64,000 nt of DNA, taken from the NCBI GenBank assembly GCA_002269645.1, contig NIVC01001459.1, positions 186,001-250,000 of the forward strand, given 5' to 3'. The notes beneath the pieces were generated by a model. That model did not search any database, was not told where the DNA came from, and worked only from the letters and a program-made list of their open reading frames with translations. Positions within the stretch are counted from its first letter, which is position 1. Every line of letters begins with the position of its first letter. Positions 6,245 through 12,200 of the stretch are shown here, piece after piece. This DNA comes from Macrostomum lignano (lineage: Eukaryota). Made by a program: the position numbers and the translations under genes.

Positions 6245-9200
6245 CTGGAATTGAAGGCGGCGCGATTCTTAGTGAGGTTTTATTGCGTTAGGGAGGACGC
6301 CCACCACCCCATTGTGACTGCCAATAGCAATTGCAATAGTGTCTATATAGTGAGGTTTTATTGCGTTAGGAAGGACGCCCACCACCCCATTGTGACTGCC
6401 AATAGCAATTGCAATAGTGTCTATATAGTGAGGTGTTATTGCGTTAGGGAGGACGCCCACCACCCCATTGTGACTGCCAATAGCAATTGCAATAGTGTCT
6501 ATATAGTGAGGTTTTGTTGCGTTAGGAAGGACGCCCACCACCCCATTGTGACTGCCAATAGCAATTGCAATAGTGTCTATATAGTGAGGTGTTATTGCGT
6601 TAGGGAGGACGCCCACCACCCCATTGTGACTGCCAATAGCAATTGCAATAGTGTCTATATAGTGAGGTTTTATTGCGTTAGGGAGGGTGCCCACCACCCC
6701 ATTGTGACTGCCAATAGCAATTGCAATAGTGTCTATATAGTGAGGTTTTATTGCGTTAGGGAAGACGCCCACCACCTCATTGTGACTGCCAATAGCAATT
6801 GCAATAGTGTCTATATAGTGAGGTGTTATTGCGTTAGGGAGGGCGCCCACCACCCCATTGTGACTGTCAATAGCAATAGTGAGGTTTTATTGCGTTACTG
6901 ACGACACCCACCACCCCATTGTGACTGCCAATAGCAATTGCAATAGTGTCTATATAGTGAGGTGTTATTGCGTTAGGGAGGACGCCCACCACCCCATTGT
7001 GACTGCCAATAGCAATTGCAATAGTGTCTATATAGTGAGGTTTTGTTGCGTTAGGAAGGACGCCCACCACCCCATTGTGACTGCCAATAGCAATAGTGAG
7101 GTTTTATTGCGTTACTGACGACACCCACCACCCCATTTTGACTGCCAATAGCAATTGCAATAGTGTCTATATAGTGAGGTTTTATTGCGTCAGGGAGGAC
7201 GACCATTGGTCAGTTTTATTTAAGTTTGCACTAGAATTTTCAGCTTAAAACTAAATAATCGCCTTAGACTACTTACCAAACACCAGCTGAAATACGTGCG
7301 CTTTTAAATCGACAACCAGCACTGCTCCATCACGCTCTGTTCTAGCTAGAATCTTCAGACCTCCGTCGGGTGTGGCTTGAAACTGGGCCGAACGAATAGC
7401 CACTCCGGCAACATCGTGAAGAGTGAGTGACAGCTCGCCTGAATAACAAAGTTCAGTAGAGTTAGATGTACATTCTCTGATACTCATTTTACGCTCTTAT
7501 GAACCTCTGATCAATAAGAATGCGAATGAGGATGCGAGGATAAATGACGTTCTTTTATTCCAGAAAAGCTAAAGTACATTCAGCTATAGACCATTTCTAA
7601 AAGTACATCATGCCCTAGATGATACTTTTCCTTACCAGTTGGAAACACTTCGTAGACGTAGACGTTGCTTCCGGAGATATGCATCACGTGACGCTGGTCG
7701 TTGGACACGAAAATCCTTCCAGTTGGAGCTACGGCGGCAATGCCTTCTTCATCGTTGGGTCTGGCATACACCTGAGGGAAGAGGTGGCGCTCGACTCGGG
7801 CGCCGGTTCTGAGGTCGATAGCGATGATTGTTGGCTCGGACTGACCAAGAGTTGCTGACGATTTATTGACTGTTGACTTGTGAAGCAGCAGGGTGCCGCC
7901 TTTTTAGTGTGTGGATTTGCAATGCGTTTGAAATCTGATTTTTATAGGTTTCTGTAGTTAAATTTAAGTATGCTCTATAATGGCTGTTAGCCTTGTGTCT
8001 AGCAGGTGTGACTTTGTGTCTAACATGTGCAAACCTGTCTGATAGGTAAAACCCTGTGTCTAACATGTGTAACCCTGTGTGTTTAACAGGTGTAACTGTG
8101 TGTCTAACAGGTGTAACCCCATGTCTAACTGGTGTAATCTTATGTCCAACAGGTGTGTAAACTTGTGTCTAACTGATGCAACCTTGTGCACGTGTCTAAC
8201 ACGTGTACCCGTTTGTCTAACAGGTGTAAAACACTCTGAGACTCACCCTGAACCAGAAGATCCGCCGTGTCTACCGAGACTGTCCTGGGCAGTCCAACCC
8301 GAGCCAGCACCATCGAACCACCGTCGACCTCCAGCTGTTGTCGATAGTCGCCAACATCGATCACCACGACTTCAACGTCGTTAACATCGTCGATAAGAGC
8401 CACCAGGACGGTGGACCGACTGTCGGGCAGTCTCAGCACCCGCCGAAGTTTCTCAGCCTTAACGCTATCGACGTCGTTAAATCGCCAACGACGCGCCGTT
8501 CGTCTCCGACTGAGTCCTACGTCGACATTGGTCGAAAAAGCGGAGGCTGAATCGACTACAAAGATGCCACCGGTGCCGCAGGCGACCCACAGCTGGTCGG
8601 TCTGCTGCCTGTAGGCCATCAGGCTCGGCGGGCAGTTCAGCTGTACCGGCTCGAAGGTCAGCCATCGACTTGTCTGCAGAGCCAGCAGGCGTCCCAGGCT
8701 GGGCTGAGCGGCGAACATCACGTGACTTCCGGCCAGCACCGGCGCGCGGCCCCAGGCGCAGCTCACCAGATTTTCGCACAGCGTCACGTCGTCGAAATCA
8801 GCGCTAACGGCGCTACGGACCGCGCAATCGGCGGCTTCGATCGTAGAAATGCCGCCGGCGTGGAAAACGACGGCCGAAGCGGCGCCGGCTGGTGGGCTGA
8901 GCGGGTAGCTGCTGTAGTCTGGGCGGTCGGTGGGAGGGCGGGCGGGTGGCGGAATCAAGTTTAGGGTGACCAAATTCGCTGTCAGGGGAGTCCACTTGAT
9001 ACTTCTTGACCCACCTGACCGCACGCGAAGGCGTATTCAGCATGCCAGTGAAGTATGAGACAGACTAGGCCTACGAGCTAAGGTCTGCGATGCTTCACGC
9101 CTGCCCCCATCTTCAGCAGGTCAAGGCTGGTGGGAGGTCTGCACCCTCTATTTGCCTCTGGCAGCCGCAGACTCCCCCACGCTGTCTCGCAAGTCGACCC

Positions 9201-12200
9201 AGGGGTACTCGTCCCCGCGTGTGTTCAAGGCAGACCCTAGGGCTGCTGGACAGACTGGGCTCCGGCGCTGGCGACCCTATCCAGTGGCTTCGGCCGAATT
9301 TGGGTATGCGGGTCTGGCTCACCAGCCTGCAGGCCGTGGTACTGCTTAACGTACCCTCTAATGCCTAAGGTGTTTGACCGTGCCGATGGGCTGGAAGGCC
9401 GGGGAGTAGTCCGGTCGCTAGCGGTCCTTTTTTCAAACCGGCTGGCTTGAGGTGTCGGCCAGTCGGGTACTCAACTCGCATAACGAGTAGCCCTCCCCCG
9501 CTTTTCAGCTATGGCCACTAACGCCACCATCCCTAAAGAAACTGACCCGGTCGCCTCTGGCTCACCGGGATCAGCCGCTCCGGTAGCTACCACTGGTAGC
9601 ACCAACGCCCAACCTGGTCCAACCGGGCCAGCTGACGCTGCCGCCGATCACCCTGGCCGCCAGTCTAGCCGACCGCGCACGGCCGAGTCTCGACGACAGC
9701 GGAACATCCGCCGCAACCGTAAGCGGCAGGAGAAGCGGGCTGCTGCTGCGTCTGAGGAGGGCACGCAAGCCGCGGTGAGGCCTTCGGGAGCCACCGCAGC
9801 GGGGAGGCCCTCTGGGGAGTCCGGTGGCGCGGCTGGGCCGTCAGGAACCGCCGTGTCCTCGGGCTCTCAGGGGGCAACCCTGCCGGCCTACCGCCTTCCA
9901 AAGACAAAGCGGCCCCGCTCAAGACCTCCGAGTCCTACGCGTCCAAGGTCAAGCAGCCGCTGCAACCCGCCGTGATGATCCTCGGCGGGGATTTCGACCT
10001 GACGCCCGAGCAGCTCGACGTCGCGTGGCGTACCATCGACGAGGGCTTGCTCAATCTAACCCTGGAGGGCGTCTTCGTGGACATCGTCAAGTCCACCAAG
10101 GCGAACGGGTGCATCCTACTGTGGTGCAAATCCGAGGAGAGCACCCAGCTCCTGCGGGATCAGCTGCCCAAGTTCGACTGGCACAGCGACCTGGGCCAGC
10201 TGACCTTCGCCTTGGAGAGCGAGCGGCCGAAGACCATCCGCCATCGGATTTGGGTCCCGGCCGACAGTGCAATCAAGTCCGGGGAGCAGCTGCGGCAGCT
10301 CCTGCTCAAGCGGCACCCGGATCTCGACGCCAGTGGTCTTGTGTACCACAGCACGGTCCGCAAGGGCACGACCGGGGCCACAGTCATCCTCGGCCTGACG
10401 GAGGGATGGGCCAAGCGGCTACCGCACGGCACAAACCTCCACCTTGGTCTCCATCAACTGACCATCCTCCGCTGTGAGGAGGGCAAGGTGGAGACCAAGA
10501 AAGACGGGAAGCGCGCCGCTCCCGGAGCTGGGGCTCATGCCCCGCCGGCCAAGCGGCAGCAGCAACCCGATCCCGAGCCTAACAAGGCTATTCGCGCTGC
10601 TGAGTCCGCCTCGCGCGGACGTAGACCCGCCCGCAGTAGCCGGCGGTCCGGTCTAATCCAGCGCGCACTTGACGAAGCTCAGTCTCTGAGACTTCACCTC
10701 GAGCAGACTCGTGCCGCTCGAAAAAACACTGAAAGCCAGCCGAGGGAACTGGACGACGGCACGGCTCAGCCTTCCAACTGGTGGGATTACCACCAGGAGG
10801 ACGCTGCCGGCCGAGCTCAGACTCCCGACGGCGGGGCGCAAGGCGAAGGCAGCAGCCGTACCCCAGTCGCTGGGGAGGAGGGCGGTGTAGCGCGGCTAGG
10901 TGACTCACCTGCCGTGGGCGCCGTGTCCGCCTCCGCGGCGGCTGGGGAGGCGGCTGAGCCTGAGCCAATGGAAATTGGCGACTCAACTCTCACCGATGAG
11001 GCTGAGAATGAGTTGCTTTTCTCCTCCCCTGGACAGTAGACATGACTGTCTCCCAGGGCATCCACTGCTTGCAGGTCAACCTGCAGCACAGCATTGCTGC
11101 TTCAGTCAACCTCTTGAAGCACACTGACCAATACGTGCCAGGGATTATCCTTATCCAGGAACCTTGGACGCTTAGGGGCAGCCCCCAACATGTCCCCACC
11201 GGCTACCAGTGTTTAACCGCTGGTACCCGGGAGGGAAACCTGGCACCAAGATCCTGCATCATGGTGTCCAGTTCTATTAACGCATGGCTCAGATCAGACC
11301 TGTCCACCAGGGACATCTGTGTCATCCAGTCTGAAGACATACTCCCTGGGAGGACTACCCTCATCGCCTCGGTTTACCTACCGGGCGACGGCGAGATGAT
11401 CCCAGTAGAGCTTGTCACACTGGTCGAGCTCTGCTCCACCAGAAACTATGAGCTGCTCGTGGCAGGTGACATCAATGCCCACCACACCCACTGGGGCAGT
11501 TCTGATATAAACCAGAGAGGTGAAGACTTCCTGGCTTATATTGCTACTACAACCCTTGAGTTCTGTAACTCGGGTAGTACCCCTACCTTCAATAACGGAC
11601 GCCGATCGGAGGTGCTGGATGCCACCCTCGCCACGCCCAGGCTCTTCCAGAGCACTAGGGAATGGCGGGTGCTTCCTGAGGCGTCCCTCTCCGATCACAA
11701 GTTCATCTCTTTCACGCTGGCCAGCGCCCGTAACGCAGGCCAGCTTTACTGGAAACGGAATGCTAGGAATACCGACTGGACCGCCTTCAGGCTTGCCCTG
11801 GAGGAGACCTATCGTTGCACTAGCGCTCCAGTCTCCATCAACACCTGCGAAGAAGCAGATGAATTTGCGGCCGCACTTACGGACTCGCTCACTGCTGCCT
11901 TCGAAGCCTCATGCCCACTAAAGGCATATAAAGGCAAACAGTCGGCCCCATGGTGGAACCCGCAGCTTGGCGACCTCCGTCGCAGAGCCAAAAGGCTTCA
12001 CCGCAGGGCCCAAAAAACTAAAAACCCGGCCGACCAAACCGCCTACCTGAACTCTATCCACGAGTTCAAGAGGCAGGTTAGGAACGCCAAAACCAACAAG
12101 TGGCGCGAATACTGTGAGGAACTTGAGGGCTCCCGCCCCACCTCCAGAATCGTTAAAGCCCTCACCCTGGACAAAATGTCCAAACTCTCCTCAGTCAAGA

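What the first reader, a model, noticed from the sequence alone, without database searches (positions are those of the whole stretch)
9021..9305. HDV-like ribozyme exactly at the TSD-defined 5' end of the LINE, with a covariant A-U P1.1
Seen: the 13-bp TSD places the element start at G9021. Independently, G9021 is the first base of a 7-bp P1 (gcacgcg/cgcgtgt) with the G1.U wobble typical of the HDV cleavage site. P3 (ggg/ccc), a 7-nt L3 (UACUCGU), P2 (acccag/ttgggt) and J4/2 C-G-A-A occur in the nested double-pseudoknot order, and the -1 base is not G. The usual CC/GG P1.1 is replaced by AC/GU, a compensatory change. The following UCAA resembles the GCAA J1.1/4 of genomic HDV. Known: HDV-like ribozymes process the 5' ends of R2, RTE, L1Tc/ingi and some LOA-clade elements. 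Inference: this element frees its RNA from read-through transcription and so needs no promoter. Its antisense orientation spares the host FSTL pre-mRNA from cleavage. Caveats: one extra U in J4/2, branched P4, and a UUCG hairpin (9286-9295) that could sequester C9295.
Basis: partly seen in the sequence, partly recalled or inferred. Interest (0 to 1): 0.9.

Follow-up and report, generated by a model that had tools for sequence, protein, structure and literature searches.

The report
HDV-like ribozyme at LINE 5' end

Summary
A 13-bp TSD (9008-9020 / 14858-14870) bounds a 5,837-bp LINE (APE-RT-RNase H). G9021 opens a 7-bp P1 whose 3' strand directly follows a GGG/CCC hairpin with loop UACUCGU, then the 2-nt P1.1 partner.

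Three relatives support an HDV-like double pseudoknot:
- L001: P1, P1.1, P2 and P4 keep pairing through compensatory changes, and its contig begins exactly at the base aligned with G9021.
- L014 (34% ORF2 identity): a fully canonical core (CC/GG P1.1, CUC/GAG P3, J4/2 CUAA).
- L005: P2 covaries.

The distal strand 9300-9305 does not pair in L001 and anti-covaries in L005. C9295 sits inside a conserved GGC-UUCG-GCC hairpin. The conserved P2 3' strand is 9255-9259, after a single P4 hairpin (9229-9247) and J4/2 C9251-A-G-A.

So the ribozyme spans 9021-9259, with C9251 as the likely catalytic base and a 170-nt structured J1/2 insert.

Caveats:
- Only four sequences are available.
- L001 and L005 lack the R-A purines in J4/2.
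- No Rfam hit, though canonical L014 also gets none.
- Cleavage is untested.

Verdict: a new member of a known kind, of moderate interest.

The parts
9008..9020 (+). 5' copy of the 13-bp target-site duplication (gacccacctgacc)
   Evidence: Identical to 14858-14870. Flanking bases differ on both sides, and removing one copy restores the 19-bp minisatellite register.
9021..14857 (+). Full-length LINE (5,837 bp): 5' UTR, ORF1, ORF2, short 3' UTR ending in (GTAAGTCAA)2
   Evidence: The TSD bounds it. ORF2 carries APE + RT + RNase H. Base 9021 aligns with base 1 of the L001 contig.
9021..9259 (+). Proposed HDV-like ribozyme (refined extent), cleavage between C9020 and G9021
   Evidence: All helices were verified by script and compared in four sequences. 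It is the only match on the window + strand to the refined and the strict descriptors.
9021..9027 (+). P1 5' strand GCACGCG (G9021 = +1)
   Evidence: 7 bp with 9216-9222, including G9021.U9222. L001 has GCCUGC/GCAGGC, with two pairs changed on both sides.
9028..9197 (+). J1/2: 170-nt structured peripheral insert
   Evidence: RNAalifold on window + L001 gave 41 pairs, 8 of them with compensatory changes. Large J1/2 inserts are known in R2 ribozymes and in 'large' HDV-like ribozymes (PMC3774820, PMC4908430).
9198..9202 (+). P2 5' strand CCCAG
   Evidence: Pairs with 9255-9259. Covaries with L005 (CCCAAA/UUUGGG) and L001 (CUCAGA/UCUGAG); L014 has 8 bp.
9203..9215 (+). P3 (GGG/CCC) with L3 UACUCGU
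   Evidence: P3 is the same in L001 and L005 and is CUC/GAG in L014. The CG at L3 positions 5-6 is kept in all four.
9216..9222 (+). P1 3' strand CGCGUGU, directly 3' of P3
9223..9224 (+). P1.1 3' strand GU (pairs with A9207 and C9208 of L3)
   Evidence: AU+CG here, CG+UA in L001, CG+CG in L014, UU mismatch + CG in L005.
9225..9228 (+). J1.1/4 UCAA
   Evidence: GCAA in L001, UAAA in L005, AA in L014.
9229..9247 (+). P4 hairpin GGCAG-A-CC[CUAG]GG-CUGCU
   Evidence: Folds alone at -8.4 kcal/mol. A hairpin sits at the same place in L005 (-13.4), L001 (-23.7, unrelated sequence) and L014 (-21.9, homologous sequence).
9248..9254 (+). Spacer GGA followed by J4/2 C9251-A-G-A; C9251 is the proposed catalytic cytosine
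   Evidence: A C lies exactly 3 nt before the P2 3' strand in the window, L005 and L001; in L014 one extra U follows CUAA. CAGA fits the C-N-R-A rule (PMC2175327). The stretch is homologous to L014 GCUGA-C275UAA.
9255..9259 (+). P2 3' strand CUGGG (conserved partner)
9274..9305 (+). Downstream conserved hairpin: ACCC(9274-9277)/GGGU(9302-9305) enclosing GGC-UUCG-GCC (9286-9295).
   Evidence: The same arrangement is present in L005 and L001. Not part of the ribozyme core in my model.
9398..9427 (+). Conserved 5' UTR hairpin block ggccggggagtagtccggtcgctagcggtc
   Evidence: 27 nt are identical in L005. It is recognisable in L001 and in the distant L014 at 353-382. Function unknown.
9511..11039 (+). 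ORF1, interrupted by one frameshift located between 9756 and 9972
   Evidence: The ATG 9511 frame closes at 9973. The homologous frame is open from 9756 to 11039. tblastn with L001 ORF1 and P0080.
11042..14746 (+). ORF2, intact, 1,234 aa: APE endonuclease, reverse transcriptase, RNase H
   Evidence: Pfam: RVT_1 2.3e-34, Exo_endo_phos_2 2.8e-20, RNase_H 1.9e-12. 100% identical over 39% of its length to a Macrostomum lignano UniRef entry.
14858..14870 (+). 3' copy of the TSD, followed by the 19-bp minisatellite array (to about 15297)

Best explanation
The first 239 nt of the LINE RNA (9021-9259) fold into an HDV-like nested double pseudoknot.

Architecture:
- P1: 9021-9027 / 9216-9222.
- J1/2: a 170-nt structured insert.
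- P2: 9198-9202 / 9255-9259.
- P3: GGG/CCC, with a 7-nt L3.
- P1.1: A9207-U9224 and C9208-G9223.
- P4: a single hairpin, 9229-9247.
- J4/2: C9251-A-G-A.

Proposed mechanism:
- When a transcript that starts upstream of the element is made, the fold is complete once the polymerase has passed about 9260.
- C9251, as general acid, together with a bound divalent metal ion then catalyses attack of the 2'-OH of C9020 on the 9020/9021 phosphodiester.
- This releases an element RNA whose 5'-OH end is G9021, exactly the first base that is later copied back into DNA.
- The J1/2 insert probably acts as the peripheral domain that holds P1 and P2 together.

Shown here: the pairings, their conservation and covariation, and the coincidence with the element's 5' end.
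Inferred: catalysis, the identity of the catalytic C, and use in vivo.

This particular copy has a frameshifted ORF1 and lies antisense to a Kazal/FSTL-like gene, so the ribozyme is a property of the family and is not necessarily in use at this locus.
For: 1. The element's 5' end is fixed independently by the TSD and coincides with +1 of P1. The related L001 contig begins at the homologous base and has its own P1 there.
2. Compensatory changes:
- P1: positions 3 and 4 go A-U/C-G to C-G/U-A in L001.
- P1.1: both pairs change in L001; CC/GG in L014.
- P2: C-G to U-A in L001 and G-C to A-U in L005, each with one added A-U pair.
- P3: GGG/CCC to CUC/GAG in L014.
- P4: a hairpin at the same place with unrelated sequence in L001.
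3. L014, a 34%-identity relative with a (TAA)n tail, has a textbook core: G.U at +1, P1.1 CC/GG, L3 UCCACGU, J4/2 CUAA. Its P4-J4/2 sequence aligns with window 9227-9254.
4. J4/2 CAGA obeys the C-N-R-A rule, and the spacing of C to P2 matches (PMC2175327).
5. Statistics: anchored shuffles gave 3 to 51 matches per 20,000. It is the only + strand match to the refined descriptor in the window and in L001. The strict descriptor hits only window 9021 and L014 110 in LINE 5' UTRs.
6. Large structured J1/2 inserts and variable P4 are documented for retrotransposon HDV-like ribozymes (PMC3774820, PMC4908430). The J1/2 fold is conserved between the window and L001.
Against: - No Rfam HDV-family hit at gathering score or at E<=10. 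This is weak evidence, because canonical L014 gets no hit either.
- Only four sequences could be compared. L005 lacks the 5' end, and L005 has a U.U mismatch in P1.1.
- L005 (CGUG) and L001 (CUGC) lack the R-A purines of J4/2. These are invariant or nearly so in selected active HDV variants, and replacing both with U abolishes activity (PMC2175327).
- The window has two extra nucleotides (GGA rather than one purine) between P4 and C9251, and its P1.1 is weaker (A-U + C-G).
- A competing 6-bp pairing of the P2 5' strand with 9300-9305 exists in this copy.
- The sequencing type of the L001 sample is unknown, so its contig start may reflect assembly rather than an RNA end.
- Cleavage has not been observed.
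Confidence: 0.72

Rival explanations
1. One reading: the same P1/P3/P1.1, but a branched 70-nt P4 (9225-9294), catalytic C9295 in J4/2 CGAAU, and P2 formed with 9300-9305.
For: - ACCCAG/UUGGGU is a 6-bp complement, one pair longer than the proximal P2.
- CGAA matches C-N-R-A.
- A C-N-A-A string is kept at the aligned place in L005 (CAAA) and L001 (CUAA).
- L014 also has one extra U after CUAA.
Against: - L001 has no distal partner for its P2 5' strand.
- In L005 the distal pairing would leave a 2-nt bulge at the P2/P3 junction, while the proximal strand compensates exactly.
- C9295 is paired in the conserved GGC-UUCG-GCC hairpin.
- The distal GGGU has a conserved local partner ACCC.
- In alignment A2 the relatives carry extra sequence exactly between 9299 and 9300.
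- L014's canonical J4/2 is homologous to window 9248-9254, not to 9295-9299.
Confidence: 0.08
2. A conserved structured 5' UTR that keeps the HDV-like topology but does not cleave. It would be either a decayed ribozyme in this lineage or a fold used for something else, such as binding of ORF1 protein or reverse transcriptase, translation initiation, or an internal promoter. In this reading the RNA 5' end at G9021 is set by transcription initiation.
For: - J4/2 lacks the R-A purines in L001 and L005 (PMC2175327).
- The rest of the 5' UTR is also strongly conserved, including a 27-nt block identical with L005 although ORF1 is only 46% identical. So conservation alone does not prove catalysis.
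- L1Tc shows that one 5' segment can be both promoter and ribozyme (PMC3383444 abstract).
- An exact 5' end can also come from an initiator.
Against: - The specific features kept are those of the catalytic core: P1.1 covariation, CG in L3, and a C three nucleotides before P2.
- The window and L014 satisfy every sequence rule tested.
- There is no known reason other than cleavage for a helix to begin exactly at +1.
Confidence: 0.17
3. Chance complementarity in a GC-rich 5' UTR.
For: - The loose descriptor allowing long J1/2 gives about 80 redundant matches in the 128 kb of both strands.
- It matches 0.26% of anchored shuffles.
Against: - Independent recurrence with compensatory changes in L001, L005 and L014.
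- Exact coincidence with the TSD-defined end and with the L001 contig start.
- The strict descriptor is nearly unique.
Confidence: 0.02

Closest known systems
R2 retrotransposon HDV-like ribozymes (Drosophila, silkmoths, many animals including a planarian R2)
   Same: - The double-pseudoknot ribozyme is encoded at the 5' end of a non-LTR element and frees the element RNA from a co-transcript.
- P1 is 6-7 bp and directly follows P3/L3.
- J1/2 loops are very long (216-498 nt in silkmoths; P1 and P1' are 23 to more than 700 nt apart).
- P4 is variable.
- Few bases are invariant.
(PMC3774820)
   Different: - R2 has a restriction-like endonuclease and inserts only in 28S rDNA, and is transcribed by Pol I. 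Its cleavage is often inside the 28S sequence.
- The element here has an APE endonuclease, makes a 13-bp TSD, sits in a minisatellite, and cuts at its own first base.
5'-terminal HDV-like ribozymes of other LINE clades: Baggins, RTE, R4/Dong, L1Tc/ingi
   Same: [quoted passage not shown]
- APE-type elements with dispersed insertions are included.
- In L1Tc, downstream sequence competes with the ribozyme fold (PMC4035085). This resembles the competing distal strand 9300-9305 here.
   Different: - The host phylum differs (a macrostomid flatworm).
- The element family differs: APE-RT-RNase H, a GTAAGTCAA-repeat tail here and (TAA)n in the distant relative L014.
- L1TcRz is a compact 77-nt ribozyme, whereas this one carries a 170-nt J1/2 domain.
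- The clade of the present element was not determined by phylogeny.
Large HDV-like ribozymes with a J1/2 peripheral domain (Webb et al. 2016)
   Same: A structured insert lies between P1 and P2. [quoted passage not shown] Here J1/2 is 170 nt (163 in L001, 85 in L014) and its fold is conserved.
   Different: The activating role is only inferred here. No kinetic data exist.
Twister-variant ribozymes of Perere-3 (RTE) in Schistosoma mansoni
   Same: A flatworm LINE with a self-cleaving ribozyme at its 5' end, next to the TSD, is thought to process read-through transcripts (PMC8501958).
   Different: It is a different ribozyme class (twister, not HDV-like) and a different LINE clade.
Mammalian CPEB3 ribozyme
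   Same: An HDV-like fold with a weakened P1.1 (my recollection; not tested here). The window has A-U + C-G, and L005 has one pair plus a U.U mismatch.
   Different: It is intronic and single-copy, not in a retrotransposon, and has a short J1/2.

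Membership tests
HDV-like self-cleaving ribozyme | Nested double pseudoknot in the order P1-J1/2-P2-P3-L3-P3'-P1'-P1.1-P4-J4/2-P2' | tested here: met
   All strands are present in that order at 9021-9259, and every pair was checked by script. 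The same order is found in L001, L005 (5' strand missing from the contig) and L014.
HDV-like self-cleaving ribozyme | P1 of 6-7 bp whose 3' strand directly follows P3, with the cleavage site 5' of the first P1 base (usually G, often G.U) | tested here: met
   P1 is 7 bp with G9021.U9222 and no gap after P3. +1 equals the TSD-defined first base.
HDV-like self-cleaving ribozyme | 3-bp P3 closing a 7-8-nt L3 that keeps a C-G near its 3' end | tested here: met
   GGG/CCC with UACUCGU. CG at L3 positions 5-6 in all four sequences. P3 covaries to CUC/GAG in L014. Conserved L3 C and G are noted for R2 (PMC3774820).
HDV-like self-cleaving ribozyme | 2-bp P1.1 between L3 and the two bases after P1' | tested here: met
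   AU+CG (window), CG+UA (L001), CG+CG (L014). L005 has CG plus a U.U mismatch.
HDV-like self-cleaving ribozyme | J4/2 = C-N-R-A immediately before the P2 3' strand (catalytic C and ribose-zipper purines) | tested here: met
   - Window: C9251-A-G-A, then CUGGG.
- L014: CUAA plus one U.
- NOT met in L005 (CGUG) or L001 (CUGC), although a C lies 3 nt before P2 in both.
- The rule comes from PMC2175327.
HDV-like self-cleaving ribozyme | Helices supported by compensatory changes in relatives | tested here: met
   P1 has 2 pairs, P1.1 has 2 pairs, P2 has 2 pairs, P3 has 3 pairs (L014), and P4 covaries throughout. There are only four sequences, so no formal covariation statistic was possible.
HDV-like self-cleaving ribozyme | Match to a curated covariance model of the family (Rfam) | tested here: inconclusive
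   No hit at gathering score or at E<=10 in the window or in relatives. The canonical L014 core with an 85-nt J1/2 is also missed, so the models do not cover this architecture.
HDV-like self-cleaving ribozyme | Divalent-ion-dependent self-scission giving 2',3'-cyclic phosphate and 5'-OH, abolished by mutating the catalytic C | not testable with these tools
   Needs in vitro transcription and cleavage, and mapping of the 5'-OH end.
APE-type non-LTR retrotransposon (LINE) | ORF2 with AP endonuclease and reverse transcriptase, a target-site duplication, a 3' simple-repeat tail and 5'-truncated copies | tested here: met
   - Pfam domains, including RNase H.
- 13-bp TSD.
- (GTAAGTCAA)2 tail.
- A 53-bp 5'-truncated copy with its own 13-bp TSD at 42171-42223.
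Specific LINE clade (I / LOA / Tad-like, as the RNase H domain suggests) | Placement in a reverse-transcriptase phylogeny with reference elements | not tested
   No reference TE library was available. There are only hints: an RNase H domain, and a (TAA)n tail plus DUF4780 ORF1 in the distant relative L014.

The most novel reading that the evidence does not exclude
The family may include active HDV-like ribozymes whose J4/2 lacks the ribose-zipper purines. L001 has CUGC and L005 has CGUG, while all five helices and a C three nucleotides before P2 are kept, and L001 comes from an element with both ORFs intact. If these cleave, the zipper is either dispensable in the context of the large J1/2 domain or is supplied by another element. 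One candidate is the downstream internal loop with a conserved C-N-A-A string (window 9295-9298). That would be a new structural variant of the HDV fold.
Probability: 0.12. Interest if true: 0.6.

Novelty: new member of a known kind. Interest (0 to 1): 0.38.

Why it matters
- It adds a macrostomid flatworm and an RNase H-bearing APE LINE family to the elements that carry a 5' HDV-like ribozyme. A full-text search found no paper that links Macrostomum with such a ribozyme.
- The distant relative L014 suggests the ribozyme is old in this lineage.
- It gives a clean, testable case in a transgenic model organism. Two alternative architectures differ in which cytosine is catalytic and where the ribozyme ends, so a few mutants can settle it.
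- It shows how motif-only reading can pick a lineage-specific cross-pairing in place of the conserved helix.
- For genome annotation, it marks the true full-length 5' end of this LINE family.

Tried and rejected
- Rfam scans of the window (gathering score; E<=10 on 8900-9500) and of loci L001-L005 and L014 found no HDV-family hit. I judged this uninformative, because the canonical L014 core is also missed.
- More relatives were sought by several routes:
  - ORF2 search.
  - Two ORF1 searches, which gave only L001's own ORF1, one UniRef entry without DNA, and L005's ORF1.
  - An exact look-up of the window's ORF2, which is not on record.
  - P0002's contig, for which no DNA could be read.
  - L002 and L009, which lack the ribozyme region.
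  - L003, L004, L012 and L013, which show no homologous core.
- Core-pattern scans of viral, metagenome and prokaryote-genome collections returned only chance matches in bacterial or phage genes, about the number expected.
- The distal P2 / C9295 model was rejected (see rivals).
- A local alternative P1 5' strand in L005 (GCUCGC at 76-81) was rejected. The same block is constant in the window and L001 and does not follow their P1 3' strands.
- I looked for another C-N-R-A register in L001 and L005 and found none that leaves P2 adjacent (my reading).
- Sample accessions were searched in the literature to learn whether L001 comes from RNA-seq; nothing was found.
- A Pfam scan of the minus-strand ORF 8140-9024 next to the LINE gave no family.

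Full report
**1. What is at the locus**

The window is a repeat-rich animal sequence. Tandem Repeats Finder lists 126 rows, mostly 19-40-bp minisatellites.

From 9021 to 14857 on the + strand lies a GC-rich LINE.
- ORF2 (11042-14746, 1,234 aa, intact) has AP endonuclease, reverse transcriptase and RNase H domains.
- ORF2 is 100% identical over 39% of its length to a UniRef protein of Macrostomum lignano, and many other hits are from that species. The window is therefore Macrostomum or a very close relative.
- ORF1 starts at ATG 9511. It is broken by one frameshift between 9756 and 9972. The part homologous to relatives is in the frame that ends at 11039.
- The element ends in (GTAAGTCAA)2.

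The 13-bp string gacccacctgacc occurs at 9008-9020 and at 14858-14870. The bases on both sides differ, so the duplication is exactly 13 bp. The target is a 19-bp minisatellite (GACCCACCTGACCCTTCTT), and removing one copy restores its register.

**2. The observation**

- P1 GCACGCG/CGCGUGU (9021-9027 / 9216-9222, G.U at +1).
- P3 GGG/CCC, and L3 UACUCGU.
- P1.1 A9207-U9224 and C9208-G9223.
- C at position -1.
- The complement ACCCAG/UUGGGU (9197-9202 / 9300-9305) preceded by C9295-GAAU.
- The UUCG hairpin 9286-9295.

Test against chance:
- With the anchor fixed at the first base and the next 400 nt shuffled (dinucleotide-preserving), a loose HDV descriptor was met in 51 of 20,000 shuffles. This fell to 11 with a 7-bp P1, and to 3 with CG also required in L3. 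The loose descriptor requires P1 >=6 bp, a 3-bp P3, an L3 of 7-8 nt, a 2-bp P1.1, and C-N-R-A plus P2 >=5 bp.
- A loose scan of the whole window finds about 80 redundant matches on the two strands, so long-J1/2 descriptors alone are not specific.
- A refined descriptor matches only position 9021 on the + strand.

**3. Relatives**

Few could be reached.

L001
- A Logan contig of 6,492 nt from ERR14788467.
- ORF2 is 60% identical, and both ORFs are intact.
- It aligns with the window from its very first base. Contig base 1 corresponds to G9021.

L005
- A JGI metagenome contig whose ORF1 is 46% identical.
- It starts inside J1/2, so it lacks the P1 5' strand.

L014
- An ENA metagenome contig.
- ORF2 is 34% identical, the tail is (TAA)n, and ORF1 carries DUF4780.
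- It is a distant relative, but its 5' UTR still shares recognisable blocks with the window.

Other loci lacked the 5' region or showed nothing homologous. Pattern scans of three public collections returned only chance hits.

**4. What the comparison shows (every pair checked by script)**

- P1: GCACGCG/CGCGUGU in the window. It is GCCUGC/GCAGGC in L001, with two pairs changed on both sides, and GGCCGUC/GGCGGCU in L014, again with G.U at +1.
- P1.1: AU+CG in the window, CG+UA in L001, CG+CG in L014, and one pair plus a U.U mismatch in L005.
- P3: GGG/CCC in three sequences and CUC/GAG in L014.
- L3: always 7 nt, with CG at positions 5-6.
- J1/2: 170, 163 and 85 nt. Between the window and L001 it folds into a shared set of hairpins (41 pairs, 8 compensatory).
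- After P1.1 and a short A-rich J1.1/4 (UCAA, GCAA, UAAA, AA), every sequence has one hairpin (P4). In L001 its sequence is unrelated but the hairpin is kept.

**5. The 3' half has to be re-assigned**

The strand that pairs with the P2 5' strand in all sequences is the proximal one:

| Sequence | P2 5' / P2 3' |
|---|---|
| Window | CCCAG / CUGGG (9198-9202 / 9255-9259) |
| L005 | CCCAAA / UUUGGG |
| L001 | CUCAGA / UCUGAG |
| L014 | CGGCUAUA / UGUAGUCG |

Evidence against the distal strand:
- In L001 no distal partner exists within 300 nt.
- In L005 the change AG to AAA in the 5' strand is matched by CUGGG to UUUGGG proximally. The distal string, by contrast, lost two U residues.
- The distal GGGU (9302-9305) has a conserved local partner ACCC (9274-9277).
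- Between them lies the hairpin GGC-UUCG-GCC (9286-9295), conserved in L005 and, as GC-UUAG-GC, in L001. So C9295 is paired with G9286.
- In alignment A2 the relatives carry about 55 extra nucleotides exactly between 9299 and 9300. Another alignment places the gap differently.

Evidence for the proximal J4/2:
- L014's canonical P4-J4/2 (AAGCAGGCCCCUAG...CUAGGGGUGCUGA-C275UAA) is visibly homologous to window 9227-9254 (AAGGCAGACCCUAGGGCUGCUGGA-C9251AGA).
- The window's J4/2 is therefore C9251-A-G-A. This fits the C-N-R-A composition and the strict C-to-zipper spacing reported for HDV ribozymes (PMC2175327).
- The ribozyme ends at 9259, not 9305.

**6. Weak points**

- L005 (CGUG) and L001 (CUGC) keep a C exactly three nucleotides before P2 but lack the R-A purines. 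In selected antigenomic variants the last A was invariant, and replacing both with U abolished activity (PMC2175327). Those two may be impaired, or they may tolerate the change.
- The window has GGA, not a single purine, between P4 and the C.
- Rfam gives no HDV-family hit. It also misses the canonical L014 core, so this says little.
- I do not know whether the L001 sample is RNA or DNA. Its contig stops exactly at +1 yet runs about 520 nt past the 3' end, which fits a processed or precisely initiated RNA with 3' read-through. This is inference.
- L014's true 5' end could not be fixed. Only a weak 4-5-bp duplication was seen. L014 also has two tandem candidate P1 5' strands, at 110 and 117.

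**7. Mechanism proposed**

Transcripts entering the element from upstream fold the 239-nt ribozyme and cut between C9020 and G9021, leaving a 5'-OH element RNA that starts at the first element base. This is the role shown for R2 and proposed for Baggins, RTE, R4/Dong and L1Tc ribozymes (PMC3774820, PMC3185411, PMC4035085). The long J1/2 insert probably acts as the activating peripheral domain described for large HDV-like ribozymes (PMC4908430). The competing distal strand in this copy could act like the inhibitory downstream sequence described for L1Tc (PMC4035085), or it may be irrelevant.

**8.

A Kazal-domain exon lies on the minus strand at 25224-25520 (Pfam Kazal_2, 2.5e-09). A follistatin-like host gene antisense to the LINE is therefore plausible. 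Whether the LINE is in its intron, and whether orientation was selected to avoid cleavage of the host pre-mRNA, cannot be decided from one locus. 'Needs no promoter' is untested; L1Tc shows that ribozyme and promoter can coexist (PMC3383444).

**9. Verdict**

The finding is real and the ribozyme identification is well supported. The catalytic C, the P2 3' strand, P4 and the 3' boundary must be corrected. The phenomenon is well known for non-LTR retrotransposons, and another ribozyme class does the same job in a schistosome LINE (PMC8501958). This is therefore a new member of a known kind. A full-text search found no paper linking Macrostomum with such a ribozyme. Interest is moderate.

Noticed in passing
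window 42171-42223 (TSD 42158-42170 and 42224-42236): A 53-bp, 5'-truncated copy of the same LINE's 3' end (85% identical, ending in GTAAGTCAA). It is flanked by its own 13-bp TSD gagtttagttact and is also inserted in a minisatellite (30-bp unit). This suggests a constant 13-bp stagger, and perhaps a liking for tandem repeats.
   Followed up: partly
window 9756-9972: ORF1 of this copy is split by one frameshift: the ATG 9511 frame closes at 9973, and the homologous frame is open from 9756 to 11039. ORF2 is intact. This could be a real mutation or a homopolymer error in a GC-rich assembly.
   Followed up: partly
window 9398-9427; L005 369-398; L014 353-382: A hairpin block of the 5' UTR (ggccggggagtagtccggtcgctagcggtc) has 27 nt identical in L005. 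It is still recognisable in L014, whose ORF2 is only 34% identical. The 5' UTR is better conserved than ORF1 (46% aa). Function unknown.
   Followed up: no
window 9299/9300: Relative to L005 and L001 the window lacks roughly 55-100 nt of the 5' UTR.
   Followed up: partly
L001 1-6 and 5966-6492: The Logan contig begins exactly at +1 of its ribozyme but continues about 520 nt beyond the LINE 3' end. This is the pattern expected for a 5'-processed (or precisely initiated) transcript with 3' read-through. The library type is unknown.
   Followed up: partly
L014 110-123: The P1 5' strand is present twice in tandem (GGCCGUC AGCCGUC). Either copy can pair with the P1 3' strand, giving two possible cleavage sites 7 nt apart.
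   Followed up: no
window 25224-25520 (- strand): An open segment encodes a follistatin-type module (Cys-rich N-terminal part plus a Kazal domain; Pfam Kazal_2 2.5e-09). It is presumably an exon of an FSTL/SPARC/agrin-like gene on the minus strand.
   Followed up: partly
window 8140-9024 (- strand): A 294-aa GC-rich open reading frame abuts the LINE's 5' end. It has no Pfam match. It could be a host exon or a fragment of another repeat.
   Followed up: partly
whole window: The window has an extraordinary density of minisatellite arrays (126 TRF rows). These include long arrays with 16-58-bp units and strongly skewed strands.
   Followed up: no
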